Part shown: positions 923 through 41,248 of the stretch, one piece after another
Layout of the letters: each line of letters begins with the position of its first letter
Position numbering within the stretch: the stretch's first letter is position 1
NCBI RefSeq assembly: GCF_006345805.1
Contig: NC_043002.1
Coordinates: 33,108,001-33,172,000 of the forward strand
Origin: Octopus sinensis
Lineage: Eukaryota
DNA: 64,000 nucleotides
Reading direction: 5' to 3'
The notes under the pieces: model-generated
Told to the model about the DNA's origin: nothing
The model's database searches: none
The model's input: only the letters and a program-made list of their open reading frames with translations
Position numbers and translations under genes: made by a program

Positions 923-980
923 ATGGGACGAAATAGTGGATATATTTATTATTACCTTACGTTATTAGCTATTCCAACTG
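923..980 (+). CDS. Putative coding exon 1 of FOLR/RfBP-like gene (signal peptide MGRNSGYIYYYLTLLAIPT-G)
   Basis: ATG at 923 (an in-frame upstream ATG is at 872), a hydrophobic stretch YIYYYLTLLAIP and a phase-1 donor ACTG|GTAATA. It joins exon 2 in frame (G+GA=Gly). Assignment is inferred from phase and signal-peptide logic only. Confidence 0.55.
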
Positions 981-1844
981 GTAATAACAGACACCATCGA
1001 CACAGGTCGCTTCGTATAATACATACATACATACATACATTCTATATATATATATATATTATATATATATATATATTATATTATATTATATATACACATA
1101 AATACAAGCGATCATACATGTACGTGCGCACACACACACACAGTTGTCCCTCGGTTTATACAGGGGATAGGTTTCACAAGTCACCGTGTAAATCAATAAA
1201 TAATAACAAATCGAGAGATGTGTTTTTAATGATGTTATTTATTAACACGAAACAAAATACTCTAACAAAATTTTAAATGTAATGTATTGAAATGAGGAGG
1301 ATAATAATTCGATTATCATATATACGTATATGATGGAAAGGAATTGTAAAATTGGGATGCTAGAGAAGTAAAGTAAACAATAGAAACGGAAAGTGAAACT
1401 AACGATAATGATTATTACTATTTCATGTCACCTTAAGGCGGAGAACTGGCAGAATAGTTAGAGCGACCGAAAATGTGCTTTTAGGAATTCTTTTACAGTT
1501 CTTTACGTTCCGAATTCAAATTGTGCCGGTGTCATCTTTGACTTTCGTCCCTCTGAGGTCGATAACATAAAACGCCATGAGTCTATATTATTGACTAACC
1601 GCATCCCTTCTAAATAGCTGTTTTTATGCCTAACACAGAGACAGTAGTTGTTTCAAGTCACTTGTTTTTCAATACACATTAATGGTGATGGTATGTGAAA
1701 TAACGAATATTTTTAATGTACTCGAAATTTCATGGACCTATTGATTTGATGTAAAGTTAAAACAAAAATAATCGACCATATAGTGAAATCGTGTACCAAC
1801 AGTATGTATGTATGTATGTATTATGTATGTATGTATGTATGTAT

Positions 1845-2175
1845 GTAAAAGAATACAAAAAATGGGACAAGAATGCAAAACATCCAGGCAGTTAGATGAT
1901 ACAAAAGAGGGACAAGAAAAAACAAGGACAGGTCATTCGGAGTTTTCTTTCTTCAATTGAGTTCCAGATTATCTTTGCAGTTTTGGCTGGTTATACTCGA
2001 GACTGCTCCAATCTGGCCAGCCCAAAGGAAAATCTAAGTTAAGAACACTAGATTCTTTGGAAGAAAGCAGCGAATATATATACGAAAACAAAGACGAAAA
2101 GAAAAAAAAGAGAAATGGTACACAAATACAAATACAAACAACAGGACATTTACAACAGGTGTCTTTCGACTAAGG
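1845..2175 (-). mobile_element. Non-autonomous repeat, probably Penelope-derived (second copy in opposite orientation at about 14605-14900)
   Basis: The reverse complement matches 14605-14900 (agtcgaaagacacctgttg...gcagtctcgagt.taacca.ccgaaa...ctccgaatgacctgtcc). A short related piece is at about 54845-54910. Confidence 0.6.
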
Positions 2176-2357
2176 ACAAATTAAATTAACCTGGCGTGTG
2201 TGAAAGTGAAGCCTTACGGCAGGGACATAAGAGATGACAGGCATAGGAAATCAACAACCTGTAGTTAGAGCTCAATATGCATATATGCTTCGGAAGGAAG
2301 TGTCAGTCAAGTAGAGTGCAATAATTTACGTAAATAACAAATGTAATAAACATCATT

Positions 2358-2439
2358 AGCTTAGAGATGTTTCTGCTTTAAGATGCAATGCACTCATAGG
2401 CTGAATGCTTGTGTATCATCTTATAGCTTCATCAGAGCT
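2358..2439 (-). ncRNA. Degenerate type I hammerhead ribozyme motif
   Basis: Minus strand reads agct-CTGATGA-AGCTATAAGATG...CATCTTAAAGCA-GAAAC-ATCTCTA-AGCT. Stem II is long and paired and stem I is AGCT/AGCT, but stem III and pair 10.1-11.1 are mutated. A truncated copy of the same family is at about 21845-21898. Confidence 0.55.
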
Positions 2440-3579
2440 TAGTGTGTTACCCATCATACACAGGAAGTATACTTTTCCATTTTGGGTAATATCAGAAAAT
2501 ATTCATTCATACATACATATAATAATTCTAAATTAAACTTTTATTAGATATCTTATTGCTTATACAGATTGACGAAATGAATGCATATTTTCAATAGAAA
2601 AATATTTATTATTGTTTACAATTAAATAAACCAAATTTTCATTTGCATAACTCCTCCCATAGATATTGTAATTTACTCCCTCCCTGCTTTCTCCTCCTCC
2701 TCTGTCTTTATGATTCTTTCTCTTTCACTGTGTGTGTAGAAGTTTTTTTACACATTGTGTGCCACCAAGCCTGGTATATGCACTCATCCTGCACCCCTTA
2801 TATTAACTCTTCCAGTAACTTTCTTTTACTATCTCTGCTCTTTTCTCTATACAGTATATACTATGACTGGAGGAATCAACCAAACAACCTACAATTTATA
2901 TCAGCTATGACATGTGCATATACATGCATGCATGTACAAGCATGCATGCATGTATGTGTGTGTGTGGCAGGAACATGTTTATTATTTTAAGCCGGTTTAA
3001 GAATGTCAGGGAAAATTTATGACGTGTTAACTAAACTGAAAGTAGAGTTGACTTAGAACACAACCTTTTAGTAAAATTTGAAATCCCAGTCAATTTGGTT
3101 GGCCTGAGGCTATAGTAGAAGACAATTGCCTTTATATATATATAAAGGCAACAAGCTGTCAGAATCAAAAGCACACCAGACATAATGCTTAGCAGCATTT
3201 TGTCCATTTTTATGGTCTGAGTTCAAATTCTGCCAAGGTTGACATTGTCTCTCATCCTTTCAGTGTTGATAAATTAAGTACCAGTTGAGCACTGGGGTCA
3301 GTGTAATCAACCTAGGGAGGATGAGGATCTTAGACCTCAATTTCGTTTCTCTTTTTTTTTGTTCTTGTTCCAGTTTTAGCACCAACCTTCTTCACGTTTT
3401 TTCCATAATTTTCTTACTTTCTTGCTGTCCAGCAACCTTTTTTTTTTTTAATACATATAATGCATAAACAGATCCTGAAAGATTTCCTTAAGATAAATAG
3501 TGTATTTCATAAATATGCCTGTTCAAGTATCATACACCAAAGCCACCATGGAAGGCAGACATTAAGCGCTGATGATGAT

Positions 3580-3618
<39 letters not shown>

Positions 3619-4077
3619 CAGATATGTACTTGCATAGCATGTGACCTGATCTGAGATTGTGTGCTGAAACAAAAACAGTTGTAGCATGGAAGGTGTTTAT
3701 AAGCCATTTAAAAACAAACAAAAACCATTAAATTCACTTCAACATTTAAATTTAATTTGTCAAAATATTTTTGTCGCTTTGAGACTGCAACCTGTTCGGT
3801 ACCAAAATTCCATGCTGCGTCTCTGTGTTTATATATATATATACACACACATATATAAATTTGTAGTGCAACAGATGGATCCATAGAATCTTGTGGCAAT
3901 CATAAGCTCTTTTAGTGGACCAGGCTATCATATCATATAGTAATCTAATATGGAGAAATATATGAAATATATGGCAGAGTTCTACACAGCTAAAATCCAA
4001 AAGATCCTGTTGATGAAATTGTTTCAGGAAGAGTATATATACTATAAAACATCAGTAAGTATGAGAAGTGGTCATTG

Positions 4078-4290
4078 CCAGTACCGCCTGACTGGCCTCC
4101 ATGCCAGTGGCACGTAAAAAGCACCCACTACACTCTCGGAGTGGTTGGCATTAGGTAAGGGCATCTAGCTGTAGAAACTCTTCCAAATCAAGATTGGAGC
4201 CTTGTGCAGCCATCTAGTTCGCCAGCCCTCAGTCAAATCATCCAACCCATGCTAGCATGTAAAGCGGACGTTAAATGATGATGATGAACC
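4078..4290 (+). mobile_element. SINE-like/RTE-tail repeat family (aagcacccactacactctcggagtggttggcgttaggaagggcatcc...gacgttaaa(tga)n)
   Basis: The same motif recurs at about 13830-14060(+), 16140-16480(-), 17650-18380(+), 22020-22620(-), 22850-23230(-), 30885-31060(+), 31960-32120(-), 34210-34395(+), 60730-61020(-), 61090-61265(-) and 63340-63820(+). Copies end in (TGA)n. Confidence 0.85.
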
Positions 4291-5085
4291 ACATAGCATT
4301 TCAACTATTTCACAGCTTTCATAATGTAATAATTTCAGTGTATAATAAATTATCCTATGTCTGCACCAATATGCATGCTACATGTTGTGCAGTACAATTG
4401 TACATTAACAAGTCAATGCAGATATAGAAGGCTCGCTCTTCAGATCACCAGAACATCGTGGTTACACCAATACAAAACAGTTGTAATCCTACAGATATCA
4501 AGTGGTTGAATAAATATATTCACTTCTCATGCCTCTTGACTTTTTATGGTGTATATGTGATGTGACTGTGTGGTAAGAAGTTTGCTTCCCAAGCACATGG
4601 TTCCAGGTTCAGTCCTATTGTGTGGCACCTTGGGCAAGTGTCTTCTACTATAGCCTCAGGCCAACCAAAGCCTTGTGAGTGGATTTGATGGGCAGAAACT
4701 GAAGGAAGCCTGTTATATATAGATATGTATATATATATATATATTTAAAAAATTAAAACAAGTTATCATTATCTATAAAAATAATGATAAAGTGGCCAGC
4801 AAATATTATTCAAATAAGGAAAATTTATAAAAAGTCAAAGTACGATAAGTTCCTGTTGGTTTGAAAGAGGAGTTAAAATCTTCCAAAACCACTTATCTCT
4901 CACTAAATATAAACACACACAGAGAATATAGCAAACATATTTCTCCAAAACAGTCTTCCTATTTGTAAATACAAATAAAATCATAGTCATTGATTTCACC
5001 TTCTGTGTTAAACCAACACTTAAGGCTCATCAGCCTGACTTACTATATAAGCTATTTCAAAAAACATATTTACCTCTCCGTGCAG

Positions 5086-5127
5086 GATGTTCAACTGAAG
5101 GCCCCTGCAACTTTCAACCAAACGTTA
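5086..5127 (+). CDS. Putative 42-nt symmetric (phase 1-1) exon 2 of FOLR/RfBP-like gene (GCSTEGPCNFQPNV)
   Basis: Acceptor tttacctctccgtgcag| and donor GTTA|GTGAGC. Open in the frame linking exon 1 to exon 3, and supplies the N-terminal Cys expected before the R-x-P-x-PQ segment. Confidence 0.6.
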
Positions 5128-5339
5128 GTGAGCAAGTATAAATTTTAAAAACTCAAGCAAGTTATTATCTATAAAAATAATGATAAAGTGGCCAAATGTC
5201 TATTATCTTATTTGTATTCTCCGTACGTGTTTACATTTAGTGAGTGATGAGTGGTTTTGGAAGATTTTAACAGGTACTTATCATACCTTGACATTTTGTC
5301 ATAAATTATTATAAATTTTGTGTGTGTATATATATATAT

Positions 5340-5604
5340 ATCACGTGATCACGTGACCAACCAGACCATCAGATGTTGTTACACATCGCTAGTCACAATG
5401 CGTTCGCATTGTTTTAGCCTTTGAATGACGCCACCCCGCAGGCCAACAGAAGAAAGAGTAGGAGAAAGTGTGGTGAAAGAGTACAGCAGGGATCACCACC
5501 CTCTGCCGGAGCCTCGTGGAGCTTTTTAGGTGTTATTGCCTCAATAAACACTCACAACGCCCGGTCTGGGAATCGAAACCGCGATCCTACGACCGCTCCC
5601 CTAA
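5340..5604 (-). mobile_element. tRNA-derived SINE (head ggcgcaatggcccagtggttagg...ggtttcgattcc)
   Basis: Box A- and box B-like head on the minus strand; a homologous copy is on + at about 29368-29670. Confidence 0.8.
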
Positions 5605-5622
5605 CCACTGGGCCATTGCGCC

Positions 5623-5716
<94 letters not shown>

Positions 5717-5767
5717 ATCATATAATATAAATATATAATATAATAACATTGATGATCGAAGGATTCA

Positions 5768-5845
5768 GCGGTACATATGTTTCGGGCCTTTATTAGACAG
5801 ATTTATAACAATGCATAATGTATGTCTGTGGCCTTCTTCAGCCGC
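5768..5845 (-). ncRNA. Minimal type I hammerhead ribozyme (left arm of the fold-back)
   Basis: Minus strand reads GCGG-CTGAAGA-AGGCC...GGCCC-GAAA-CATATG-TA|CCGC, with an intact core, palindromic stem III ACATATGT and a GUA cleavage triplet. Confidence 0.75.
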
Positions 5846-6931
5846 GCACAACAGCTTCCACAAGGACATGTGTTAATCAAAAGTTCTTGGTTGGGGATGC
5901 AAATCCTCTCATTCACGTACGACATAATGCGGCAGCAGCATAGAGTTGAAGCGTCCATCTCTTTCTTCTCTCAATGTAGAATGAGGAAAATTGGATGTTG
6001 AGGTAATGTAAATAAATAATACATATATAGAGGTGAAGATGGAGGGGCGAGAGTTCGGACGAGGGATAAAAAATGTATAAAATGTGTAAGTGTAGAATAA
6101 TATAAAAATGTAGAGGATAAAGGGTTGTAAGGAGATGTAAAGGGGGTATAAAGAAATATAAAGTAAAAATAGAAATAGAAATAAAAGTAAAAAAAACCTG
6201 ATAAAAACATGATAAAAGTGTAAAAGAATGTAAAGATAAGGGATGTATAGAGGTTATGGACCAAGCATGGTGGTCAGGAGATTGATAAAATTTAGTTGTA
6301 GATTGTCAGTACATCAACAGTTTCGTCTGGGACTTAATGCGTTGTAAATCAGAGCTGATGAGCATTTAATCTGGTTCCTTGAATTAATGGACTTCTAGTA
6401 CATACATATATATAAATGCTCATCAGCTCTGATTTACAACGCATTAAGTCCCAGACGAAACTGTTGATGTACTGACAATTCTACAACTAAATTTTATCAA
6501 TCTCCTGACCACATGCTTGGTCCATAACCTCTATACATCCCTTATCTTTACATTCTTTTACACTTTTATCATGTTTTATCAGGTTTTTTTACTTTATTCT
6601 ATTTCTATTTTTACTTATATTTCTTTATACCCCCTTTACATCTCCTTACAACCCTTTATCCTCTACATTTTTATATTATTCTATACTTACACTTTTTATA
6701 CATTTTTTATCCCTCGTCCCGAACTCTCGCCCCTCCATCTTCACCTCTATATATGTATATTTATTTACATTACCTCAACATCCAATTTTCCTCATTCTAC
6801 ATTGAGAGAAGAAAGAGATGGACGCTTCAACTCTATGCTGCTGCCGCATTATGTCGTACGTGAATGAGAGGATTTGCATCCCCAACCAAGAACTTTTGAT
6901 GTAACACATGTCCTTGTGGAAGCTGTTGTGC

Positions 6932-7009
6932 GCGGCTGAAGAGGGCCACAGACATACATTATGCATTGTTATAAATCTGTCTAATAAAGGCCCGAAACAT
7001 ATGTACCGT
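6932..7009 (+). ncRNA. Minimal type I hammerhead ribozyme (right arm; sense to the host gene)
   Basis: Reads GCGG-CTGAAGA-GGGCC...GGCCC-GAAA-CATATG-TA|CCGT, with a perfect 5-bp stem II base, palindromic stem III and predicted cleavage after A7005. Confidence 0.8.
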
Positions 7010-7116
7010 TGAATCCTTCGCATCATGTTTTTATTTTATTTTGATCAATTTACTCCACCACCTACACCACCAAACGGTATACACAGGTGCTTATAATTAT
7101 CAAGTACTCACCCCGA

Positions 7117-7199
<83 letters not shown>

Positions 7200-7206
7200 A
7201 TATATA

Positions 7207-8138
7207 CCGTAAATCCTTGAGTATAATCCACATTTTCTTCCCTAAAATTTAATGGTCAAAATCCCTAGTGCATACTATATATGAGGTTAAAAATGAAAAA
7301 TACTTTCTAAGCAATGTCCGAGTCTCTATTTGCTGTCCGGCAATGTTTATTCAAATGTATTTTGTGATGTTGGGCACAAAAATACCTTAAGCTAAGCCTG
7401 AAAGCAACGAAGTCAGAAAAGAATCATCCATAACTTGCAGTAAGCAGCATTTATTGAAATAAAAGTATTCAGAACACAGAATAACATGTAACAAAAACAA
7501 TTTGCAAACATATTTACATTCCCATTTAACAATTGAGAACATCACCATTATTGTATTACGCATGCGCGGAAGCGTTTGTTCGACTTGGTGCTGCTGGCTT
7601 AATTATGCACGAATTGTGCTTAATAGTTTAGTGCTAAATAGTTCATCCTGCTGTTTGTATTGGCAGTCTGCATCATTACCGTGGGAAACAATAGAACTTA
7701 ATTAAATACCAGTATTAAATGTTTGAACTACTGTGGGTCTTTACTAGGGTTTTTTATAAGCGGGACTTAAACCTGTACATTAATCTCCAATAAAACATTT
7801 TATACATTACATGCCCATAAAATGCCACATAGATCTTATTCAGCTATGTTTAAACATGAAGTTATATCATATGCTGAAGAGCATGGTAATAGGGCCGCCG
7901 GAAGTAAATTTGATGTTGACGAAAGCAATGTCAGGTTATGGAGAAGAAATAAAGATGAAATTAAACAGATACCAAAGATAAAGAAGGCAATAATAAAGGA
8001 CGTTACCGTATACAATTTTACAATATAGCCCTCCTTGACTTAAGTTAGAGAAGGGGTGCGTATTATACGCAAGGTTTAGGTTTTTCAGAGGTACAGCCCC
8101 CTAAAAATCCCCTGCGTATTATACTCGAAGAGTTACGG
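7207..8138 (+). mobile_element. Internally deleted pogo-family (POGK-like) DNA transposon retaining a Brinker-type DNA-binding-domain fragment
   Basis: Imperfect TIRs CCGTAAATCCTTGAGTATAA / TTATACTCGAAGAGTTACGG with TA on the left. ORF 7822-8028 (RSYSAMFKHEVISYAEEHGNRAAGSKFDVDESNVRLWRRNK) resembles BrkDBD. A second, 5'-only copy is at about 59673-60016. Confidence 0.8.
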
Positions 8139-12970: not shown

Positions 12971-12984
12971 ATTTATTTATGTAT

Positions 12985-12996
12985 ATATATATTTGC

Positions 12997-13575: not shown

Positions 13576-14942
13576 CCCGTGCACCCGCCCTTGCCCACCC
13601 CACCACCAATACCGGATATCTCTTATTTTTGCTCCATCTATACCGGATGTCGCTTCTCCCACCACCATTATAGGTGTCTACTCTTCGAACCCCCCTCTTC
13701 AATACGCTATTTGACCATGCATTACCCCTCTATTATATCCTACGTTCTACTTGCCTAGAACCTGTCATCATTTCTCTGAACCACCCCTCCCCACTGGTGC
13801 TCCCCTATATTTCCCCCCCCCCCACATAAAAAGCACCATCCGAACGTGGCCGATGCCAGACCCCTCTGGCACCTGTGCAGGTGGCACGTAAAAAACACCC
13901 ACTACACTCGCGGAGTGGTTGGCGTTAGGAAGGGCATCCAGCTGTAGAAACACTGCCAGACTAGACTGGAGCCTGGGGCAGTCCCGAGCTCCCCAGACCC
14001 CGGTCGAAACCGTCCAACCCGTGCTAGCGCGGAAAACGGACGTTAAATGATGATGATGATATATGTGTGTGTGTGTATGTATTTATACATGTACATACGT
14101 ATGTATGTTTGCATGTTCTCTTGTTTTTGATTGTCTAAATTATTCCTCTGAGGAAAGAGCTAATTTTTAACAAAGATACAAGCTCCATCTTTGGGATATA
14201 AATAACAAAAATAATGTCACATTTTAAACTTGACAAAATTCTTACATATTTTTACTGTTCCACTTCCAGATCGTATTTGTAATGTACGAGGTAGTTGGTT
14301 GATTTTCTGAAAACCCTAGAGCCAATTATGTAATAATGACAACTGACTTATAGAAATGCATTCTTTTTTTTACATTTATTCTTTTACTTGTTTCATTCAT
14401 TTGACTGCAACCATGCTGGATCATCACCTTTAGTTGAACAAATCAATGCCAGGACTTATTCTTTGCAAGCCTGGTACTTATTCTATCTATGTCTTTAGCC
14501 AAACCACTAAGTTATGGGGACATAAACACACCAACATCAGTTATGATGGGGGTGGGGACAAACTCAGATCCACAAATACATACATATATACATATATATA
14601 TGTATATAGTCGAAAGACACCTGTTGTTAATGTCCTGTTGTTTGTATTTGTATTTGTGTAACATTTCTCCGGTTTTTTTTTCCATCCTTGCTTTTGTATA
14701 CATTCACTTGTTTTCTTCCAAAGAATCTAGTGCTTTTAGCTTAGGTTTTCTTGGGGCCAACCAGAATAGAGCAGTCTCGAGTGTAACCAACCGAAACTGC
14801 ACAGACAATCTGCTTCGCAACTGATGACTGAAAGCTCCGAATGACCTGTCCTTGTTTGTTCCTGTCCGAATGTTTTGTTGTTGCTTGTTACATTCCTGTT
14901 CCATTTTTGTTTTGATTATATATATATATATTTCTCTTTTTC

Positions 14943-15335
14943 TCTTTTACTTGTTTCAGTCATTTGACTCCGGCCATGCTGGAGCACCACCTTTAATCGA
15001 GCAACTCGACACCGGGACTTATTCTTTTGTAAGCCCAGTACTTATTCTATCGGTCTCTTTTGCCGAACCGCTAAGTAACGGGGACATAAACACACCAGCA
15101 TCGGTTGTCAAGCAATGCTAGGTGGACAAACACAGACACACAAACATACACACACACACATATATATATATATATACATATATACGACAGGCTTCTTTCA
15201 GTTTCCATCTACCAAATCCACTCACAAGGCTTTGGTGGGCCTGAGGCTATAGTAGAAGATGCCATGCAGTGGGACTGAACCCGGAAGCATGTGATTAGTA
15301 AACAAGCTACTTACCACACAGCCACTCCTGCGCCT
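14943..15335 (-). mobile_element. Composite tRNA-derived SINE of about 400 bp (head gtgtggtaag..ggttcagtccc, internal (TA)n(TG)n, tail ending gactgaaacaagtaaaa)
   Basis: Full copies also at about 17208-17592(+), 38200-38590(-), 40445-40862(-) and 58097-58510(+). Partial copies at about 4560-4720, 8580-8780, 15345-15505, 16965-17200, 19330-19495, 34865-35205 and 45460-45620. Confidence 0.88.
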
Positions 15336-18300
15336 ATATATGACGGGCTCCTTTCAGTTTCTGTCTACCAAATCCACTCAGACAGCTTTGATTGGCCCGA
15401 AGCTATAGCAGAAGACACTTGCCCAAGATACCATGCAGTGGGACTGAACCTGGAACCATGTGATTTTGAAGCAAGCTTCTTACCACACAGCCACTCCTGT
15501 GCCTATGCATGTATATTGTATAAAGCTTAAATTTACCAATTACATTTTCTCTGCTTATTATGAATATATATGAATACATAAACCAAAACACACACACACA
15601 CATACATGTATGCATATATATATGTATGTGTGTGGATTGTTTCCAGAGACAAGTGGAATATAAAATCTCTTACTTGCAATACAGGTAAATGCTAGTGACA
15701 AGAAGAGCACTCAGCTGTAAAACATTGCCTTGATAATATGCATTTACCCAACCCATGCTAACATGATCATGAAACAAATGAACAAAGAAATGCAAGGGAG
15801 ATGTATGGGTGAGTTAATAGGACAATGGGTACCCTGACAATAACTCAGCGGTTTGTGAATTGTTATTAATGTAGTGATATATCTGTTGCTCAGACACTTC
15901 TTTACACCCTCTTCTATCTAGATCACATTCTTTTATGTCCTGTTCTATCTAGATCCCTTTCCTCATAGACAGGAGATCAGTCTGTTTCAGACAACATTCC
16001 CATACTGCCAACTGTTCATATAACCAGTAACAAAGACAATCTGAAGTGTGTAGTACACTAAATTGTGCCGCCTTTTGTGTAGACAGACAACTATGCCAAT
16101 ATTTAAGTTAAATGTAACCATATCTAGTTAACCATTCATCATCTTCATCATCATCATTTAACGTCCGCTTTCCATGCTAGCATGGGTTGGACGATTTTGA
16201 CTGAGGGCTGGCGAGCCTGATGGCTGCACCAGGCTCCAATCTTGATCTGGCAGAGTTTCTACAGCTGGATGCCCTTCCTAATGCCAACCACCCCGAGAGT
16301 GTAGTGGGTGTTTTTTACGTGCCACCGGCACAGGGGCCAGTCAAGCGGTACTGGCAATGACCTCGCTCGAATCTTTTTACACATGCCAGTGAAGCGACGT
16401 TGGTAACGATCACACTTGAATGGTGCCCTTTTACGTGCCAAGGGTACGGAAGCTAGTTGGCTGCTCTGGCAACGAGAACGTTCGAATGGTGCTCATGGTA
16501 CCCTACTAGCACAGGCATGAGTGCCAGTAAGGCGCTGCTGGTAACGACTCCTTACTGGCATACAACCATTACGCTTGTATATACAAATATAGTGTTACAT
16601 TGAAAGTAATTTTAGTCTCAGATCAATTATGTTTATTTAGATTTATGATCAAAGACATTCTAACAATAACTATTACAACTTTTATACATAATGGTGAATA
16701 ATGACATGGTAAATAGCATAGCTACCACTTCATTATGCAATGTGACCTTCTTTTGATGGGGTGATGGTTGTTTGAGAGATATTTGGTTATTCTTGGAAGT
16801 CTAGCAATCACTCAGAGATTCCCTTATTGGACATTCAAGCCTAGCAAAGGTTGTGTGAGTTCCCACATTTTTAGTTTTAGGAATGTGCCAGACATTAAGC
16901 TGATTAGTACAGGTGTAGTACTTAGGGTTTAGCCAAAAAGCCAAATGGTTCCCTTACTCTTTTACTCTTTACTCTTTTACTTGTTTCAGTCTGTGGCCAT
17001 GCTGGAGCACTGCCTTTAGTCAAGGAAATCGACCCCAGGACTTATTCTTTGTAAGCCTAGTACTTATTCTATTGGTCTCTTTTGCTGAACCTCTAAGTTA
17101 CGGGGACATAAACACACCAGCATTGGTCATCAAGTGATATTGGGGGGGGCAAACACGGACACACAAACATATACACACACATACATATATATATATACAC
17201 ACACATACAGGAGTGGCTGTGTGGTAATTAGCTTGTTTACCAACCACATGGTTCTGGGTTCAGTCCCACTGCGTGGCACCTTAGGCAAGTGTCTTCTACT
17301 ATAGCCTCGGGCCGACCAAAGCCTTGTGAGTGGATTTGGTAGACAGAAACTGAAAGAAGCCCGTCGTATATATGTATATATATATATATGCATGTGTGTA
17401 TTTGTGTGTGTCTCCCTAGCATTGCTTGACAACCGATGCTGGTGTGTTTATGTCCTCGTTACTTAGCGGTTCAGCAAAAGAGACCGATAGAATAAGTACT
17501 GGGCTTACAAAAGAATAAGTCCCGGGGTCGAGTTGCTCGATTAAAGGCGGTGCTCTAGCATGGCCGCAGTCAAATGACTGAAACAAGTAAAAAAAAATAT
17601 ATATATATATATATAAATCAAATCAAATCAAAATAGACAAAATAGATGAACATCAATGGAATTTGTATCTTGTGGTACCAGTGCCTGTGGCACACAAGAA
17701 ATCCATCAGTGCTGTAGTCAGTGCGGTGGGCACATGACAAACACCATCCGATCGTGGCCGTTCGCCAGCCTCATCTAGCACCTGTGTCGGTGGCACATAA
17801 AAAACACCATCCGAAGACCCGGCAAGACTAGTCAGGCCATAACCCATGGCCCCTACCTGGGACGTAGTCAGTCCACCTGTGCATACCTTCCTTCTTGTGA
17901 CACTTGTGAAGACCTGTTGAGGCAAGTGAAAATCAAAACAAATCAAAATAGATGAACATCAATGGAATTTGTATCTTTGTGGTACCAGTGCCGGTGGCAC
18001 GTGGCACACAAGAAAACCATCCGAACGTGGCCGTAGCCAGTACCGCATCGACTGGCCTCCGTGCTGTGGGCACGTAACAAGCACCATCCGATCATGGCCG
18101 TTTGCCAGCCTCATCTGGCACCTGTGTCGGTGGCACATAAAAAACACCATCCGAGCGTGGCCGTTTGCCAGCCTCGTCTGGCACCTGTGTCGGTGGCACA
18201 TAAAATCACCCACTACACTCTCGGAGTGGTTGGCGTTAGGAAGGGCATCCAGCTGTAGAAACACTGCCAGATCTGACTGGACTGGTGCAGCTTTCGGGCT

Positions 18301-18633
18301 CCCCAGACCCCAGTTGAACCGTCCAACCCATGCTAGCATGGAAAGCGGACGTTAAATGATGATGATGATGATGATGATGATGATATATATATATATATTA
18401 ATAATAAAATATTAGGGAATAAATCCAAACTAACAGGGAAAAATCAGATTTAGGATTAAATCCAATTTTATAGTATAAATATATTATATTATATTATATC
18501 AAATTAGGGATAAAACCACTATTAAGCAAATCAAACAATGAAAAACATAAGCCAATACATAAAATTATTAATTTATATTATTTTAAATATATATCAAAAG
18601 TATTAAAAGTTTAATAAAAGATAAAGAGTAAAA

Positions 18634-18703: not shown

Positions 18704-19965
18704 ATTGAAATATCTAAAATATAAAATATAATCAGAAATATTTAAACAATATTTTTAAGATATAAATAATATAATAATTTTACTTATAATGAACTCTATT
18801 ATCAAACTAGAAACATAAAACTTAACAATTATGATTATATCAAAATCGACTATAATGTTAAATATTAATTTTAATTTATAAGGTAGGAAACCCACCAATT
18901 GTCTAATATCGGTATTAGTCTATATCTAATTACATAAATATTTAAAAATGACTAATATATATAAATTATCAATGAAAATATATAAATGTATATAAATATT
19001 ATAATTAAGATCTAAAATAATCTCTATAAATAAATATATATGCACATATAATAATATCCTAATAAATTAATTTTTCATATTTAAAGATGAAATAGCTAAT
19101 TTCAAAATACAAATGAACAAACTTAAACAAACTTTCGGAAATCTTATGTAAGATAATTATAGAAATAATCAATTCGTAGTAATATAGTATCGAATAAATA
19201 CTATAAATACTATAAATATAATTATCAATGGGAATAACTAGCGATTATCAATTTTAAAAAATAACTAAGTTATGCTATTAAATATATATATATATATATG
19301 AATATATACATTCACACACATACATATATACAACGGGCTCCTTTCAGTTTCCGTCTACCAAATTCACTCACAAGGCTTTAGTCAGCCCGAAGCTATAGTA
19401 GAAGACACTTGCCCAAGGGGCCATGCAGTGGGACTGAACCCAGAACCATATGGTTTGTAAGTAAGCTACTTACCACACAGTCTCTCCTACGCCTATACTG
19501 TGCACAGAAGATTTACAACTAATCTTTCACTCTGTCAAACTATCTGAAATGTGGTATAAAAGAAAACAAATGCAGAACACTTTGAGGAAAGATGAAAGGA
19601 GGTGGACACTTTACAGAAGTTGTAAATAAAGTTTCTATTCCAAGAGTATAATATTGTTAAAAAAAAACATACCATTTATTTCATGCCTGTGTGTGTATAT
19701 GTGCATACACACAAAGATATGTATATATAAGTATATATATGTAAGAAAATGGAGAAATACATCTAAATCAAATATCAATTACACGATAATACTCAATCAC
19801 ATACTTTATTAAACTACCACATAAGAGACTGTAGGGTTACATATAAAAAGCAGAACAAATCAATGTACATACAGTAGTGTACATAAAAAAGTGTACATAA
19901 AAGAGTAATGATGTATAATAAGTAGAATATATATAAAAGAGAATATAAATATAAGTATAGATTAC

Positions 19966-28226: not shown

Positions 28227-28428
28227 ATCCACGCAGATTTCCTGAACCACAGCATGGTCTGGTTAACTGCTCTTGGTATGCCCCAAATGCATGTTGCAAG
28301 CGGACCGAAGTGACATCTGTGTTCAGTAACATGTACCCTTTATATGGGGCATCTAAAGCTTGTATGAACCGTATGAATTACTTAATGTGCTACTTCTGTA
28401 GTCCAGAACAGGGTATTTGGTACCATGG
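28227..28428 (+). CDS. Exon 3 of FOLR/RfBP-like gene (xPRRFPEPQHGLVNCSWYAPNACCKRTEVTSVFSNMYPLYGASKACMNRMNYLMCYFCSPEQGIWYHG)
   Basis: Strong acceptor tttctttactttcag| and donor TGG|GTAAGT. The C-x-W-x5-CC and C-x8-C-x2-C-S-P pattern is typical of the folate-receptor/riboflavin-binding/NPC1-NTD fold. 202 nt, phase 1 to 2. Confidence 0.9.
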
Positions 28429-31961: not shown

Positions 31962-31993
<32 letters not shown>

Positions 31994-34548: not shown

Positions 34549-34628
34549 TAAAATGAGTGTATGTGAAGAATACTGCGTTGATATTTACAATGAATGTCGA
34601 CTAGCTTCCTATGAAGGAACCTCTATAG
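34549..34628 (+). CDS. Exon 4 of FOLR/RfBP-like gene (KMSVCEEYCVDIYNECRLASYEGTSIG)
   Basis: Acceptor atttcttccag| and donor ATAG|GTAAGT. Phase 2 to 1 matches both neighbours, and VC-x3-C-x6-C is the 'lC..fC..wy..C' motif of the family. Confidence 0.88.
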
Positions 34629-35441
34629 GTAAGTACCAAGTTACATCTTTATTTGATTCCTTTCCAAGTCTCCTTTGCACCATGATTCCATTTTAGATTT
34701 CCAAATATTGAGTTATGAAGCACATCACTTTCAGGTTCCGTCTCAACATCTAAAGTATAAATATACAAAAGAATAATAAGGTTAAGTAGTCAGTATATGT
34801 CTGTGTTAATACATACACACTATCTCCCTCTCACACACACACACACACACATGTTCACAAATATTCTCTTATTCTTTTATTTGTTTCAGTCATTTGACTG
34901 TGGCCATGCTGGAGCACTGCCTTTTAGTCGACTAAATTGACCCCAGGACTTACTCTTTGTAAGCCTAGTACTTATTCTATCGGTCTCTTTTTGCTGAACT
35001 GCTAGGTTACAGAAACAACATAAGTTAAAAGGACATGTATAGGCACAGGAGTGGCTGTGTGGTAAGTAGCTTGATTATCAACCACATGGTTCCGGGTTCA
35101 GTCCCACTGTGTTGCACCTTGGGCAGGTGTCTTCTACTATAGCCTCAGGCTGACCAAAGCCTTGTGAGTGGATTTGGTAGATGGAAACTGAAAGAAGCCT
35201 ATTGTGTGTGTGTGTATATATCATCATCATCATCTATATCATCATCATCATCATCATCGTTTAACGTCCGCTTTCCATGCTAGCATGGGTTGGACATATA
35301 TATATATAATTATAAAGTAGGGTATCTACAAGATACCACCATGCTGAAAATAGCAGCCATGATCTGACTCTAAAACCACCATAATTGTCCATATATCAAC
35401 ACGGAGAGAAAACAAAGAGACAAGATGAAACTAGTAAAAAA

Positions 35442-36330
35442 TTACTGAATAATTATAGATCCCGGATTTCTGGCTTTGCATCTACTTTTATTTCTATACA
35501 CTTTCAAAAAGGTGGACAAAAACCTATGGTTGCAAAAAGAGATCACCTCAGTAAATCTATTCAAAGTTTTTGGCCCAAAAGACTTAAGGATGGCAAAGGA
35601 TTCTTTTATACACAACTTACACTTATTTATGTTTACTCTGAAGTAAGGGGCTCTCAAAATAACGGACCATTCCAGAGAATAACTCTTATTATTCCTCTTT
35701 AGATTGTGTATATAAGATGCAAGTGTGGTAGAGCTACAGTATTTTTCATTTGAAAACGAGATCATATGGGCCTTATACCTAGCCTTAAAATTTACTGTAC
35801 TACCTATATAAAACTTATCTAAATTATCCTCATCCTTAACAATACATTTATAAATCACATTAGTAATTAGACAGAACCCATCAAGGGGACATAATCCAGA
35901 GTCCTACAATTACATGATTTCTCAGGGCCATCCCTAACCTTATTTCTACGACTAACAGTACTTGTCAGATTTCCCACAATCACTCCTTCACACCTCTCAT
36001 TACTGGAGTTCGATACACCCAGTGGGAGCAAAATGTTGGCATCACTAACCTTAGGCGTATCAGAACTTACCTGCCCAGAACCAGGGTTTCTATCAGAAGA
36101 ACATCTCCAGTGCACTTGCTCATTTAACTTGTTTCTATTTATAGATGCAATCATGGAGGCCAAATTTGGCATTACTTGGGAAGTTCTCCTCCAGAATCCT
36201 AAAAAACATCTTGGGCAAATTTCTTACTCAAAGGGAAAAAGGAGTGGTGGGCAAACCATATTATTTCCCTTATTCTGAGGAATGTCTAGGAGTGATAGAA
36301 CAAATAGAAAGATAAATTTCTTCAACATGT
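35442..36330 (-). mobile_element. Penelope-like element: GIY-YIG endonuclease region (frameshifted)
   Basis: Minus-strand frames give CNCR..., IYKC..FYIGSTVNFKARYKAH, TTLASYIHNLK, CKLCIKESFAI and LNRFTEVISFCNH. An upstream thumb-like segment reads PPLLFPLSKKFAQDVFRILEENF. Confidence 0.85.
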
Positions 36331-36339
36331 AAATACTGA

Positions 36340-36800
36340 GAGGCCACAGCCCATGGGAAACTAGCCTGTAGATTTAGGAAAGCTCTGAAGGAGACCAAAC
36401 TCAACATTAAGATCACTGAAAAACCAGGGCGCTCCATTAGATCATAGTTATCTAGGATGTACCGCTTTGAGAATACCACATGCACCAATGAGAACTGCAT
36501 GGAATGCAAAATTAACCCTGGTGTTAACTGTAGAACTAGAAATGTAGTCTACAGCATGAAATGCATAGAGGACGCTTGTAAAGACAAGAACATGATATAC
36601 ATTGGTGAGACATCTGGAAGCATTGCAAAAAGACTAAATGAACATTTGAGACAATATGACGACAAAAAACAGTCCTCCGTTCTCTACCAACACGTCAAAG
36701 ATCAACATAGAGGCACACTGGGCTGACTTGACATCTGCATTTCATCCAAGCACTGGAAGGACCAATCACTCAGACAAATACAGGAGTAAATGAAACACCC
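36340..36800 (+). mobile_element. Second, different Penelope-like element: GIY-YIG endonuclease region
   Basis: Reads CTNENCMEC...NCRTRNVVYSMKCIEDAC...IYIGETSGSIAKRLNEH...VLYQHVKDQH, a Zn-knuckle plus GIY-YIG arrangement. Confidence 0.85.
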
Positions 36801-38166
36801 TCTGTAATAAATAGGAAATATATATAGAAGGTAGTGATACTCCTATACCCACAGTATATACATACACAAGTACAGTTGTTAGTAGACAGTTATGTAGGTG
36901 AATACATATATATACATATCTTTATATATATAAGTAGGTAAATGGATATGAAGGTAAATAGTTAAGCAGACACGCACACACTCACATAGATGTACACAAA
37001 AGGAGACAGAAACACATTATGACCATATACACACACACGAAACTCAACCCAGCAACTCCCCTAATTCCAGGGAATGTCCTAAGGGGGTCTACTTTTTAAG
37101 GGCCACCTAACTGGAGTCCCACTGACCCCAATATATTTACTGCATTTGAAACTAAATGCATGGCATCTGTGACCAAATCAGAGCAATGACAATGAATTTC
37201 ATACCATGAACTCCCAGGGAGTACCATAAGGAGGTTCAATTTCTGAAGGACTGCTTAAATGGGGCCCCACTTACCCTGCCTATTTTGACTGCATTTTACT
37301 CACTCCTACACCTACTGATTAAACTATGATCAGCTTCAGTGCTTAGCAAATTTTCAGAAATAAGCTTGGGCATTCTAAATACCTTCATGTACATTCAAAT
37401 CAAGATAAAGAGTTATAACAGGTACGTTTCAAGTTTGGTAGTGTGAATATTTATATTTTGCAGTTTATGAATCTTATGTCTAGGTGGAAAACTAATCTTC
37501 CTCTTCTGGTTATATATTGGTGCTTGGGCCTGCAGCCCCAGAGTTCTAGAGTTTTTTTCTACCTGAATACCCTACCAAATTCCCAGCTAACCTGAATGCC
37601 ACTTGAAGGGCAGCTTGAAGGCCAGAAACTTAGCTGTAAGTCTTATAGAAAACTGTAAGTCAAACTGGGAACTATGTGTATTTCTATCGGTAAAGCTGGC
37701 AGAAAGCAGTCCATGGGTTGATACACCAACAGACTGTTACAGTGATGGAATTCACATTACATGTTGAATGAACAACAAGTTAATGGGACATGGGGTTTAG
37801 GTATAGGTATGAGTGAAGTCTAGGTATTGAGTGTATGAGTATGAATGTGTGGATATATGTCAGGTAAGGAGTTTGGAATGGAGTATCAGATAATTGATAC
37901 CAGGAGATACACAGACAATGAATGTGTCCAAATTCATTATGCTACACGAGGGTAGAGGGCTGCAATGCAGCCTGATAGTGAGGCCAAAGGCCTCAAAGGT
38001 GTCCTCCACAGGAGCTAGCCTGAATGCCACCCAAAGGGCAGCTTCAAGGCTAGTATATATATATATATATATATATATATTTAATGTAGGATAAAATTTT
38101 TTTCAAAAAAAATTTTTATCAATGGCCAGCATATTAAAAAATACCTTTAAAGGTTAAAATTATAAA

Positions 38167-38199
<33 letters not shown>

Positions 38200-39299
38200 C
38201 TCTTTTACTCTTTTACTTGTTTCAGTCATTTGACTGCGGCCATGCTGGAGCACTGCCTTTAGTCAAGCAAATCGACCCCGGGACTTATTCTTTGTAAGCC
38301 CAGTACTTATCCTATCGGTCTCTTTTGCCGAACCGCTAAGTGACGGGGACGTAAACACACCAGCATCGGTTGTCAAGCAATGCTAGGAGGACAAACATAC
38401 ACGCATACACATATATATATATACATATATACGACAGGCTTCTTTCAGTTTCCGTCTACCAAATCCACTCACAAGGCATTGGTCGGCCCGGGGCTATAGC
38501 AGAAGACACTTGCCCAAGACGCCACGCAGTGGGACTGAACCCGGAACCATGTGGTTGGTTAGCAAGCTACTTACCACACAGCCACTCCTGTAAATATATA
38601 TATATATATATTTACAAACCACGAGTGTAACAGCATAGGAAGTAATACTCATTGTCATTGGAAATAGAGAACTAAATTTTTTAAATGACACAGGTATGAT
38701 ACACTTATAACCAGAACTCTGGATTTCTTGACAGCAAATCTATTGAATACTCAGTGTCATTCATCAGTTGTAGCAAGTTTTATACCTGTTTAAACTACTG
38801 TCCAGTGTTCTCTCCTGTATTAAACTTGCATTAAACATGCAACATCTGACAAATGACAGTGAGTATCAAATAGGTCACTGATGAGGAGCTCAAAATCCTG
38901 AATTTAAGTGTTCCATATCTGTATTATTTAATAAGTGTGTGTGTTTAGATCTTAGCTTTTGGAATAGGTACACAGCCATCAGAGGTGACTAAGAGGTTGG
39001 CATCAAGAAAAACATCTGGCCACAATGCACTAGAAGAGTGGATATAAAAATCATTATGCTGATGATATATATACATACCACACATACACACACACACATA
39101 TATATATCACTGTATTGACCAGACTTTCAGATGTTATAATACATTGCTGGTCACAGTGTGCTTCCAGCTATTTCTTGATTGTGCCATTCTTTTATATTGT
39201 GCCCTAATCATTTAACTAGATCATCTCATTCCGGCATTCTGAGTGGTCTTTTCCAGTCATTTGTAAACCATTCAACAACTGCATAAGTCCACCTCTTAT

Positions 39300-40435
39300 C
39301 TAGGAACCTTGTGACCTGTCCTGTTGAACTTGTGTTTTCTGTATTCTACAATCACGTCATGTTACTCTGCTCAAATTATCTCATTTCAGATATGCTCTTA
39401 CAATGATATTCCTTGCATGGATCTTTCCATATCCCTTTACATTGTAGCCAATCATTGCTCTTCTCTCTTTGTAGTAGCCCACATCTCACTTATGTATAAG
39501 ACCACAGGTAAGATGGTGCTATTGAAATGTCTGGCACATATGGTCTTGTCCAGTTTTTTTGCCTTACATTCTGCCCTTATACTCTTTGAAGTTTCAGCAT
39601 CTATGTTTTGGTACATAATTACTCTGTATCCTAAGTAGACATAATCGATATCATTACTTCCCAACTCTGTTCAACTTTCTGCTACATTTTCAGATGGCAC
39701 TTTTGCTCATTTTAAGGCATACTGCTAAGCTATAGATGTCCAGCTATGTCAGTATGGTTTGCAGCTAATCTGTGCTGTACATGATGAGAATGATGTCATC
39801 TGCAAATAGGTGGTATGTTAGTAGCTTGCTGTTGATGTTCACACCCTTTGTCCAGTCAGTGTTTCTGATGACCATTTCTAGGTATGTGGCAAAGAGCTTT
39901 GGAGAGATGGTATCTTCTTGTCTGATGTCCTTTCCAATTAGCAAAGGAAGAGCTATATCAGAGACACATCCAGAATTCACATCCCCTAGCAGTTTGATGA
40001 ATTGTTCCCCAACACCTTGCATTTCCAGTGATTTCAACACTGTCTTCATATCAACACAATTAAAGGCCTCTTTTGTAGTTGATAAAAGTAATACACAGAG
40101 GCAGCTTGTGTTTTTTTTTGCTCATTCTGTAAGCTGTGTTACATTGAATACGGTATCCAGTAGTAGTTCTTAGAGAAACCTGCTTGCTCCTTTTTGCTGC
40201 TAGTCGTCAAAATATTTGGATTATCTAGTAACTATGACCTTTGTAAACAGCTTGTAGAGGTGGGACAAGAGATAGTTCTTTAGATCTTCTTTATTACTCT
40301 TCTTATGAAGCAAAATTCTATCTGAATCTCTCCACAGCAAAGGTATTTCACTCTTCTTCAGATAGTGATAGAAGCAAAGAATGAGGATTTTTTTCCCTGC
40401 TCTTCACCCCCATGCCTTAGCATCTCTGTTATGCC
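39300..40435 (-). mobile_element. RTE-clade LINE reverse-transcriptase fragment (heavily decayed)
   Basis: Contains IRQEDTISPKLF, LLTYHLFADDIIL, DYVYLG and HFNSTILPVVLYISEMW. Confidence 0.85.
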
Positions 40436-41063
40436 ATATATACTCTTTTACTCTATTACTTGTTTCAGTCATTTTGACTGTGGCCATGCTGGAGCACCGC
40501 CTTTAGTCTAGCAAATCGACTCCAGGACTTATTCTTCGTAAACCTAGTGCTTATTCTATCGATCTCTTTTGCCGAACTGCCAAGTTACAGGGACATAAAC
40601 ACACCAGCATCGGTTGTCAAGCGATGTTGGGGGGACAAACGCAGACACACAAAACATACACGCACACACACACACACACATATATATATACATATATACG
40701 ACAGGCTTCTTTCAGTTTCCGTCTACTAAATCCACTCACAAGGCTTTGGTCAACCCGAGGCTATAGTAGAAGACACTTGCCCAAGGTGCCACGCAGTGGA
40801 ACTGAACCTGGAACCATGTGGTTCGTAAGCAAGCTACTTACCACAAAGCCACTCCTACGCCATCTATATTACAAAGGAAGCGCAAACACAAACATACACA
40901 ATGTTTAATTGACTGCACTGTAGATAACATTTCTAATAATTCCTGTGGTTTCTTATTCAGACCATAATATTTTATTGAATTAATCTCTCTTCAACCTAAA
41001 TAGCAATTTAATTTATAAACTAATCTCATTTTTGATTTTCTTTTCTTTTTTTTTTTTTTGCAG

Positions 41064-41248
41064 GAAGTGCTTATGGCAACGGGACAGCGTTTTGTAATGC
41101 ACAGAACTTTGATGTGGTTGAAGGAACACATAACTGTTTTGAGTTTGATCCTCTGCCATTTGCTGCTGCTATATCTCTTACCTCAACATCCGTCATATTA
41201 TACACATGTTTGTGCCTTTCCATAGTTCTAAGACATTTCTCTCTTTAA
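41064..41248 (+). CDS. Terminal coding exon 5 of FOLR/RfBP-like gene (GSAYGNGTAFCNAQNFDVVEGTHNCFEFDPLPFAAAISLTSTSVILYTCLCLSIVLRHFSL*)
   Basis: Poly-T acceptor tttttgcag| in phase 1, two further Cys, an NGT sequon, a hydrophobic C-terminal tail, and TAA at 41246-41248. Confidence 0.88.

What the first reader, a model, noticed from the sequence alone, without database searches (positions are those of the whole stretch)
923..41248. Hidden five-exon gene for a small, probably GPI-anchored folate-receptor/JUNO-fold protein
Seen: five exons with canonical splice sites and matching phases give 567 nt, or 188 aa: MGRNSGYIYYYLTLLAIPTGCSTEGPCNFQPNVNPRRFPEPQHGLVNCSWYAPNACCKRTEVTSVFSNMYPLYGASKACMNRMNYLMCYFCSPEQGIWYHGKMSVCEEYCVDIYNECRLASYEGTSIGSAYGNGTAFCNAQNFDVVEGTHNCFEFDPLPFAAAISLTSTSVILYTCLCLSIVLRHFSL. 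Sequons NCS and NGT are present. Known: this Cys pattern belongs to the folate receptor/riboflavin-binding protein/IZUMO1R (JUNO)/retbindin/NPC1-NTD fold. Inference: it is a compact invertebrate member that lacks the Trp-rich C-terminal pocket segment of vertebrate FOLRs, so its ligand may not be folate (another vitamin, a sterol or a protein partner such as in gamete recognition). The ORF track shows only fragments of it.
Basis: partly seen in the sequence, partly recalled or inferred. Interest (0 to 1): 0.7.

Follow-up and report, generated by a model that had tools for sequence, protein, structure and literature searches.

The report
Annotated octopus folate-receptor-like gene

Summary
The window is Octopus sinensis chromosome CM016864.1. 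They are exons 2-4 of RefSeq gene LOC115212873, whose 198-aa product is identical in O. sinensis, O. vulgaris and O. bimaculoides.

In O. bimaculoides exon 1 carries an in-frame TGA and exon 2 is absent, yet that species makes the same protein. The true exon 1 holds the signal peptide, an acidic stretch and the conserved first cysteine (CTYF).

The family call is right: Pfam Folate_rec scores 61.5 bits, and an AlphaFold model matches riboflavin-binding protein, JUNO, FOLR2, NPC1-NTD and HHIP-N. A GPI-type tail is present in all 40 aligned relatives. Ten of 15 FRalpha folate-contact residues fall in deleted loops, and D81 is Leu.

The protein belongs to an old, strongly conserved, functionally uncharacterised compact family found from sponges to amphioxus. 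The gene is ordinary and already catalogued; only its ligand is unknown. Nothing supports a JUNO-like role in gamete recognition.

The parts
28227..28428 (+). It encodes (D)PRRF...GIWYHG, including C58, C66, C67, C89, C98, C101 and the invariant motifs CCKRTEVTSVF and NYLMCYFCSP.
   Evidence: AG acceptor and GTAAGT donor. 100% identical to P0056 residues 44-111. The exon with its flanks is 93.8% identical to O. bimaculoides. The junctions are colinear in cDNA contig L004.
34549..34628 (+). It encodes KMSVCEEYCVDIYNECRLASYEGTSI(G), including C116, C120 and C127.
   Evidence: Canonical splice sites. 100% identical to P0056. No nucleotide differences from O. bimaculoides across the 80-nt exon.
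41064..41248 (+). It holds C148, C162, the NGT sequon, the FDPLPFAAA candidate omega region, the hydrophobic GPI-signal-like tail and the TAA stop.
   Evidence: AG acceptor and stop codon at 41246-41248. 100% identical to P0056 residues 138-198. Tail layout analysed.
57819..57871 (+). Alternative terminal exon of O. sinensis isoform X2 (XP_036359703.1, 154 aa). It is spliced directly after the exon ending at 34628 and gives ...TSI|DYQNMGQSFSFTFKFSP*. This isoform lacks C148, C162 and the membrane-anchor tail.
   Evidence: The peptide is found at 57821-57868, preceded by TTTTTCAG and followed by TAA. The annotated gene end L001:68374 equals window 57871. It is a predicted isoform, and read support could not be checked.
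48841..48882 (+). Counterpart of the terminal exon of O. bimaculoides isoform X2 (tail FCAASISLGFNT), which would use an internal donor at 41207|GT. In O. sinensis that splice would read FYAASIYLLGI* in a different frame, so its use here is doubtful.
   Evidence: SISLGFNT is encoded at 48856-48879 after a CTCGCAG acceptor. No O. sinensis isoform with this tail was among the three members of the octopus cluster.
923..980 (+). It is not an exon; it is intron 1 sequence about 1.3 kb downstream of the true exon 1.
   Evidence: In-frame TGA at codon 6 in O. bimaculoides, and 7 of 58 nt differ, which is intron-like divergence. Its best 11-residue hydropathy is weak, 1.48 against 2.58 for the true N-terminus. 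It lies inside a 220-aa junk ORF rich in simple repeats.
5086..5127 (+). It is not an exon; it is a 42-nt intronic segment.
   Evidence: No counterpart in the O. bimaculoides locus, either by blastn at E<=1e-5 or by a scan allowing 8 mismatches. No orthologue has its residues. It stands in for the conserved C-T-Y-F motif that the true exon 1 encodes.

Best explanation
The window carries most of Octopus sinensis gene LOC115212873. The gene has four coding exons spread over about 42 kb, with introns full of SINE-like repeats.

The 198-aa product has these parts, in order:
- a cleavable signal peptide (MASIRVSLFIILYIFSVGLTLLVHC);
- a short acidic/basic linker;
- a compact folate-receptor-fold domain of about 125 residues, held by six disulfides and carrying a conserved N-glycan site (N57);
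- a C-terminal GPI-attachment-type signal.

It is therefore most likely a glycosylated protein tethered by GPI to the outer face of the plasma membrane. It would use the groove homologous to the FOLR/RBP ligand pocket to bind a small, probably hydrophobic or aromatic, ligand, or possibly a conserved protein partner.

Shown here: the gene structure, the family and fold, the conservation, and the loss of the folate-contact loops. Inferred: signal-peptide cleavage, GPI anchoring, the disulfide pairing and the non-folate ligand. The ligand itself is unknown.
For: - The window maps exactly to CM016864.1.
- The four-exon CDS of 597 nt translates to P0056. That protein is predicted identically by the annotations of three octopus species, including NCBI LOC-numbered models and an O. 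vulgaris record with a CAI accession.
- Only 4 silent differences in 597 nt separate it from O. bimaculoides, while the flanking introns differ by about 6-13%.
- An intronless cDNA contig of a relative crosses all the junctions.
- Pfam Folate_rec scores 61.5 bits.
- The AlphaFold model has pLDDT 81. Its Foldseek hits are RBP, JUNO, FOLR2, NPC1-NTD and HHIP-N, with probability 0.99-1.0 for the first twelve.
- The 12 conserved Cys align with 12 of the 16 Cys of FRalpha.
- All 40 relatives share a tail of about 32 residues: small residues, a polar spacer, then a hydrophobic stretch ending a median of 5 residues from the C-terminus.
- Ten of 15 FRalpha folate contacts lie in deleted segments, with D81->L96 and S174->N152.
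- Orthologues occur from a sponge and cnidarians to amphioxus, at 36-65% identity to the octopus protein in A1.
Against: - No RNA-seq from O. sinensis itself could be examined, so the octopus junctions rest on gene predictions, cross-species identity and a cDNA from a relative.
- No trained signal-peptide or GPI predictor was available, and a short C-terminal transmembrane anchor is not excluded.
- The Foldseek TM-scores are only about 0.4, partly because the signal peptide and tail were included in the model.
- The loss of folate contacts is read from a remote alignment (below 20% identity), anchored on the cysteines.
- C. elegans FOLR-1 shows that invertebrate members of this superfamily can respond to folates (PMC11442744).
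Confidence: 0.85

Rival explanations
1. The reader's five-exon model is a genuine alternative isoform, transcribed from a second promoter inside intron 1 and using exons at 923-980 and 5086-5127.
For: All four extra splice boundaries are canonical and the phases fit. The ATG, frame and donor of 'exon 1' are kept in O. vulgaris, the closest of the three species here, where the true CDS has no differences and these segments are 98-100% identical.
Against: O. bimaculoides has a stop at codon 6 of 'exon 1' and lacks 'exon 2' altogether. Neither segment shows coding-type conservation. The N-terminus is a poor signal peptide. The product would lose the C40 'CTYF' cysteine, which most relatives keep and which aligns with FRalpha C37. 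The product is not in a collection of about 15 billion proteins. There are 407 chance alternatives of the same kind upstream.
Confidence: 0.03
2. It is a working folate receptor that binds and takes up, or senses, folates like FRalpha/beta or C. elegans FOLR-1.
For: It passes the Pfam Folate_rec threshold. The fold matches FOLR2. Three aromatic pocket positions are kept: FRalpha Y60, Y85 and Y175 align with Y83, F100 and F153. C. elegans FOLR-1 responds to a specific folate (PMC11442744).
Against: The pterin-anchoring Asp (D81) is Leu. W102, R103, R106, W134-W140 and W171 fall in deletions. A family profile does not find FOLR1, FOLR2 or JUNO in the PDB even at E<=10; it finds only RBP and HHIP-N.
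Confidence: 0.12
3. It is a gamete-recognition protein analogous to mammalian JUNO.
For: JUNO structures are among the best fold matches, and both proteins have GPI-type tails.
Against: JUNO arose by a mammal-specific duplication (PMC4807442). This protein is identical in three octopus species and is conserved from a sponge to amphioxus, the opposite of the fast evolution typical of gamete recognition proteins. The fold match to RBP is equally good.
Confidence: 0.03
4. The C-terminal hydrophobic stretch is a permanent transmembrane anchor, or the protein is secreted, rather than being a GPI signal.
For: No trained GPI predictor was run. The octopus tail ends with RHFSL after the hydrophobic stretch. 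Predicted isoform X2 lacks the tail and would be secreted.
Against: The hydrophobic window is only about 12-17 residues long and ends 0-15 residues (median 5) from the C-terminus in all 40 relatives. Small residues (G, A, S, D) lie about 10 residues upstream, as in known GPI signals, and there is no cytoplasmic domain. Vertebrate FOLR1, FOLR2 and JUNO are GPI-anchored (established knowledge; PMC4751342 abstract).
Confidence: 0.1

Closest known systems
Chicken riboflavin-binding protein (PDB 6HCE)
   Same: It is the best PDB match both by sequence profile (E 8.3e-5) and by fold (Foldseek E 2.9e-4). The cysteine framework is shared, as is the aromatic residue in the C-x-x-C-S-P motif (RBP chain Y92 aligns with octopus Y99/F100).
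   Different: RBP is a secreted yolk protein with a phosphorylated C-terminal domain. The octopus protein is shorter and has a GPI-type tail. It lacks the 'CAHNWLTDWERDESGENHC' loop, and the Trp (chain W173) that stacks on riboflavin, as I recall from the RBP crystal structure literature, falls in a deletion.
Human folate receptors alpha and beta (FOLR1/FOLR2; PDB 4LRH, 4KN2)
   Same: Same Pfam family and fold. Twelve of the 16 cysteines align. Both have a signal peptide plus a GPI-type C-terminus, and the conserved core motif C-x-x-C-S-P...W is shared.
   Different: The mature octopus protein is about 60 residues shorter. FRalpha Cys 89, 152, 169 and 175 have no counterpart; from memory of the UniProt record, these form two disulfides. 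Ten of 15 folate-contact residues are deleted, and D81 is Leu. No sequence-profile hit at E<=10.
Mammalian JUNO (IZUMO1R; PDB 5F4Q, 5JKA)
   Same: Fold match with probability 1.0. JUNO is also GPI-anchored and has also lost folate binding (PMC4751342, title and abstract).
   Different: JUNO is a recent mammal-specific FOLR duplicate (PMC4807442), so the octopus gene is not its orthologue. The two lost folate binding in different ways: substitutions in JUNO, loop deletions here.
NPC1 / NPC1L1 N-terminal domains and HHIP-N (PDB 3GKH, 3QNT, 7PGK)
   Same: Weaker matches in the same cysteine-rich fold superfamily (Foldseek E 1e-2 to 0.15; HHIP-N profile E 0.007). These bind sterol (NPC1 and NPC1L1 N-terminal domains) or glycosaminoglycan (HHIP-N), which shows that the fold is not tied to vitamins.
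   Different: They are domains of large multi-domain proteins. Identity is 13-18%, and no ligand residues were compared.
C. elegans FOLR-1
   Same: It is the invertebrate Folate_rec-family protein with experimental data that my literature searches turned up. It acts as a signalling receptor with the GON-2 TRPM channel (PMC11442744).
   Different: No nematode protein appears among the named members of the compact family. Its relationship to the octopus protein was not tested here.

Membership tests
Pfam Folate_rec (PF03024) superfamily | HMM score above the curated gathering threshold | tested here: met
Only profile positions 8-121 of 172 are matched.
Pfam Folate_rec (PF03024) superfamily | FOLR/RBP-type cysteine-rich fold | tested here: met
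   AlphaFold model with pLDDT 81.3 and pTM 0.67. The 17 best Foldseek hits are RBP, JUNO, FOLR2, NPC1/NPC1L1 N-terminal domains and HHIP-N; the first twelve have probability 0.99-1.0, with TM about 0.4.
Pfam Folate_rec (PF03024) superfamily | Conserved disulfide framework | tested here: met
   The family's 12 conserved Cys align with FRalpha C37, 57, 65, 66, 96, 105, 109, 135, 139, 146, 189 and 209 (UniProt numbering). That is six of the eight FRalpha disulfides if the pairing I recall from the UniProt record is right. The pairing itself was not tested.
Functional folate receptors (FRalpha/FRbeta type) | Folate-contact residues: D81, Y85, W102, R103, R106, W134-W140, W171, S174, Y175 (numbering of the FRalpha-folate structure 4LRH; list from memory of that paper) | tested here: not met
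   Ten of 15 lie in segments deleted in the family. D81->L96 and S174->N152. Only three aromatic positions are kept: Y60, Y85 and Y175 align with Y83, F100 and F153. The FRalpha sequence was verified against 4LRH_A.
Functional folate receptors (FRalpha/FRbeta type) | GPI anchoring through a C-terminal signal | tested here: inconclusive
   A rule-based look finds small residues (AAA 171-173), a polar spacer and a hydrophobic end. All 40 relatives have the same layout. No trained predictor or experiment was available.
Functional folate receptors (FRalpha/FRbeta type) | High-affinity folate binding | not testable with these tools
   This needs a binding assay with the recombinant ectodomain.
JUNO / IZUMO1R | Orthology to the mammalian FOLR4 duplicate | tested here: not met
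   JUNO arose within mammals (PMC4807442). The family profile does not find JUNO by sequence even at E<=10. The resemblance is at fold level only.
JUNO / IZUMO1R | Binding to IZUMO1 on sperm | not testable with these tools
Riboflavin-binding protein | A Tyr/Trp pair that stacks on the isoalloxazine ring (mature Y75 and W156, from memory of the RBP structure literature) | tested here: not met
   The Tyr position is aromatic (Y99/F100), but the Trp (chain W173, in 'QSMWGES') falls in a gap of the family profile.
Compact metazoan Folate_rec family (about 185-215 aa; named 'uncharacterized' or 'riboflavin-binding protein-like' in databases) | Invariant motifs NC[ST]W, CC[KR].TEV[TA]SVF and NY[LM]MC[YF]FC.P, 12 Cys, a signal peptide and a hydrophobic tail | tested here: met
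   P0056 carries all of them. It is 36-65% identical to the 39 relatives from molluscs, annelids, nemerteans, a brachiopod, tardigrades and cnidarians. Further members occur in a sponge, a flatworm, echinoderms, a hemichordate and amphioxus.

The most novel reading that the evidence does not exclude
The compact, roughly 190-aa, GPI-tailed Folate_rec proteins form an ancient and strongly conserved metazoan family. It runs from a sponge to amphioxus, and no vertebrate, arthropod or nematode member was seen among the named hits. Its ligand is not folate, and no member has been studied. It could represent the ancestral form from which vertebrate FOLR and RBP arose by insertion of Trp-rich loops, or a receptor for an unrecognised conserved ligand or partner.
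Probability: 0.45. Interest if true: 0.4.

Novelty: already known. Interest (0 to 1): 0.2.

Why it matters
The practical lesson concerns the scan. When a window starts inside a gene, a reader without tools will tend to invent 5' exons to complete the open reading frame. Here the three well-conserved exons were called exactly, and the two invented ones failed a simple cross-species test.

Biologically, the gene is ordinary and already in RefSeq. The one mildly interesting point is that it belongs to a deeply conserved, unstudied branch of the folate-receptor fold that has lost the folate-binding loops. Its ligand is an open, testable question in tractable relatives such as Nematostella, oysters or amphioxus.

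Tried and rejected
- I looked for the orthologue's N-terminal 43 residues in the window by sensitive tblastn and found nothing. That led to locating exon 1 upstream of the window.
- I first took the window to be O. bimaculoides because the exons were 100% identical. Exact 40-mer mapping showed it is O. sinensis.
- Several 1300-1500-aa 'calcium channel alpha2delta-3' models carry this domain at the N-terminus. The Lingula example reads as a FOLR-like paralogue with its own hydrophobic tail, followed by a second signal peptide. It is probably two neighbouring genes fused by the gene caller. No alpha2delta sequence lies within the 78 kb of L001, so I dropped this lead for this locus.
- A global hhalign of the family against FRalpha failed. 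A local hhalign and a MAFFT alignment gave consistent, cysteine-anchored results.
- A single-sequence PDB search gave only a weak NPC1-related hit.
- Rfam found no RNA family in the window.
- Literature searches found no paper on this locus or on this invertebrate family. The amphioxus 'folate receptor' paper (PMC10199209) was not opened; its title describes a leucine-rich-repeat receptor.
- Exact look-up found no contig carrying P0001 and only genomic contigs for P0056, so no octopus transcript contig was available.


Full report
**1. The observation**

The model splits into two parts of very different standing.

**2. Where the window comes from**

A protein search returned an annotated Octopus protein as the best hit. 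It covered only 80% of the query.

The cluster holds isoform X1 (P0056, 198 aa; XP_029637523.1, XP_014779161.1, CAI9724665.1).

Exact 40-mers taken every 1 kb place the whole window on O. sinensis chromosome CM016864.1, so that window position p equals L001 position p+10503.

**3. The true gene structure**

The annotated start codon is at L001:10001. The first exon is 130 nt long (L001:10001-10130, which is window -502..-373) and ends at a GTAAGA donor in phase 1. It encodes MASIRVSLFIILYIFSVGLTLLVHCRRHDDEEEEKKKMSCTYF plus the first base of D44.

Joining it to window 28227-28428, 34549-34628 and 41064-41248 gives 597 nt that translate exactly to P0056.

Further support:
- A 952-nt contig from a public sequencing run of another cephalopod (L004) carries the whole orthologous ORF without introns. 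It aligns ungapped to CDS nucleotides 85-512, across all three junctions.
- Between O. sinensis and O. bimaculoides the CDS differs at 4 of 597 nt, all silent. The exon flanks differ by roughly 6-13%.

**4.

- No orthologue contains their residues, and the exact 188-aa product is absent from a collection of about 15 billion proteins.
- In O. bimaculoides the 'exon 1' segment has a TGA at codon 6 and 7 differences in 58 nt. 'Exon 2' has no counterpart in the locus at all. That species nevertheless encodes the identical protein from the true exon 1.
- The invented N-terminus is a weaker signal peptide. Its best 11-residue hydropathy is 1.48, against 2.58 for the true one.
- It replaces the 'CTYF' cysteine (C40), which most relatives keep and which aligns with FRalpha C37.
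- The 28 kb upstream of 28227 contains 407 open ATG...GT segments of 40-300 nt in a compatible phase, 62 of them with a hydrophobic start. A plausible-looking solution is expected by chance.

These two exons are artefacts made to complete a truncated gene.

**5. Other ends of the gene**

The annotated gene runs to window 57871. O. sinensis isoform X2 (154 aa) splices 34628 to an exon at 57819-57871 and loses C148, C162 and the tail. The terminal exon of O. bimaculoides isoform X2 has its counterpart at 48841-48882, but in O. sinensis the frame differs. Both are predicted isoforms that I could not check against reads.

**6. What the protein is**

- Pfam Folate_rec matches at 61.5 bits against a cut-off of 29.8, but only over profile positions 8-121 of 172.
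- An alignment of 40 relatives (A1) shows 26 invariant columns. These include N57-C58 of a sequon, CCKRTEVTSVF, NYLMCYFCSP and 11 cysteines; a twelfth conserved cysteine, C40, lies in exon 1.
- The AlphaFold model built on A1 has pLDDT 81.3.
- By sequence profile the family reaches only RBP (E 8.3e-5) and HHIP-N (E 0.007). It does not reach FOLR1, FOLR2 or JUNO even at E<=10.

**7. The pocket**

I verified the human FRalpha sequence against PDB chain 4LRH_A and aligned it to the family.

- Twelve of the 16 FRalpha cysteines align with the family's twelve. C89, C152, C169 and C175 have no partner. From my memory of the UniProt record, these form exactly two disulfides (89-175 and 152-169).
- I took the 15 folate-contact residues from memory of the paper describing the FRalpha-folate structure. 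The numbering fits the verified sequence.
  - W102, R103, R106, W134, H135, K136, G137, W138, W140 and W171 fall in segments that are deleted in the family.
  - D81 aligns with L96, and S174 with N152.
  - Only three aromatic positions are kept: Y60, Y85 and Y175 align with Y83, F100 and F153.
- The Trp that stacks on riboflavin in RBP (chain W173) also falls in a gap.

The caveat is that the alignment is remote and anchored on the cysteines.

**8. Membrane attachment**

All 40 relatives have a tail of about 32 residues after the last cysteine motif. The tail reads 'DPxVF' plus small residues, then a polar spacer of about 10 residues, then a hydrophobic stretch that ends a median of 5 residues from the C-terminus. 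None has a cytoplasmic domain. This is the layout of a GPI-attachment signal. No trained predictor was available, so this step is inferred.

**9. Distribution and what is known**

- An exhaustive profile search found 551 cluster representatives at E<=1e-3 and 104 at E<=1e-30.
- Named members come from molluscs, annelids, nemerteans, a brachiopod, a flatworm, tardigrades, cnidarians, a sponge, echinoderms, a hemichordate and amphioxus. No vertebrate, arthropod or nematode appears among the named hits.
- The databases call these proteins 'uncharacterized', 'Folate receptor-like domain-containing' or 'riboflavin-binding protein-like'.
- I found no paper on the locus or on the family.
- JUNO is a mammal-specific duplicate (PMC4807442), so a JUNO-like role has no support. 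The extreme conservation also argues against a role in gamete recognition.
- C. elegans FOLR-1 shows that invertebrate members of the wider superfamily can act as signalling receptors (PMC11442744). Its relationship to this family was not tested.

**10. Verdict**

This is a real, ordinary and already annotated gene. Three exons were called exactly, and two were invented because the window cuts off the first exon. The 'hidden gene' claim and the gamete-recognition idea are not supported. The remaining open point is the ligand of this conserved compact family.

Noticed in passing
window 61692-62621 (+): A 309-aa ORF matches the C-terminal part of the Pfam reverse transcriptase model RVT_1 (60.1 bits; profile positions 116-194 of 205) and contains a YADD motif. 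It looks like a 5'-truncated non-LTR retrotransposon copy lying downstream of the gene.
   Followed up: partly
window 18069-18205, 60900-61029 (inverted), 63422-63649; also the 281-nt inverted pair 18086-18366 / 60739-61019: A 63-bp unit (GGCACATAAAAAACACCATCCGAGCATGGCCGTTTGCCAGCC...) occurs as short tandem arrays at three separate places and in both orientations. Two copies are 95% complementary over 281 nt. It is probably part of a dispersed repeat element that carries an internal minisatellite.
   Followed up: partly
window 4556-4745, 14400-15516, 16986-17597, 19290-19498, 35033-35221, 38229-38611, 40473-40861, 58086-58448: The introns hold at least ten copies, in both orientations, of an interspersed repeat of about 180-400 nt at 80-90% identity. 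It is SINE-like. One copy ends about 200 nt upstream of the exon at 41064.
   Followed up: no
window 46406-47733: About 1.3 kb of (TA)n microsatellite in two arrays explains the drop in G+C to 23% at 44-48 kb. Shorter (AT)n, (CTA)n and (ACAT)n arrays lie at 5625, 28684 (just after the exon ending at 28428), 50459 and 59267.
   Followed up: no
Relatives, not the window: P0097 (Lingula, 1379 aa) and other hits of 1300-1560 aa: A paralogous FOLR-like unit sits at the N-terminus of proteins named 'calcium channel alpha2delta-3' in several invertebrates. In Lingula the unit keeps its own hydrophobic tail and is followed by a second signal peptide. This suggests two adjacent genes fused by the gene caller, and possibly a conserved neighbourhood of the paralogue with alpha2delta. 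No alpha2delta sequence lies within 78 kb of the octopus gene.
   Followed up: partly
L003:50865-51248 (O. vulgaris), just after the stop codon of the orthologue: The O. vulgaris annotation calls a separate 127-aa gene with no Pfam match about 200 nt downstream of the stop codon. It is probably 3'-UTR sequence miscalled as a gene.
   Followed up: no
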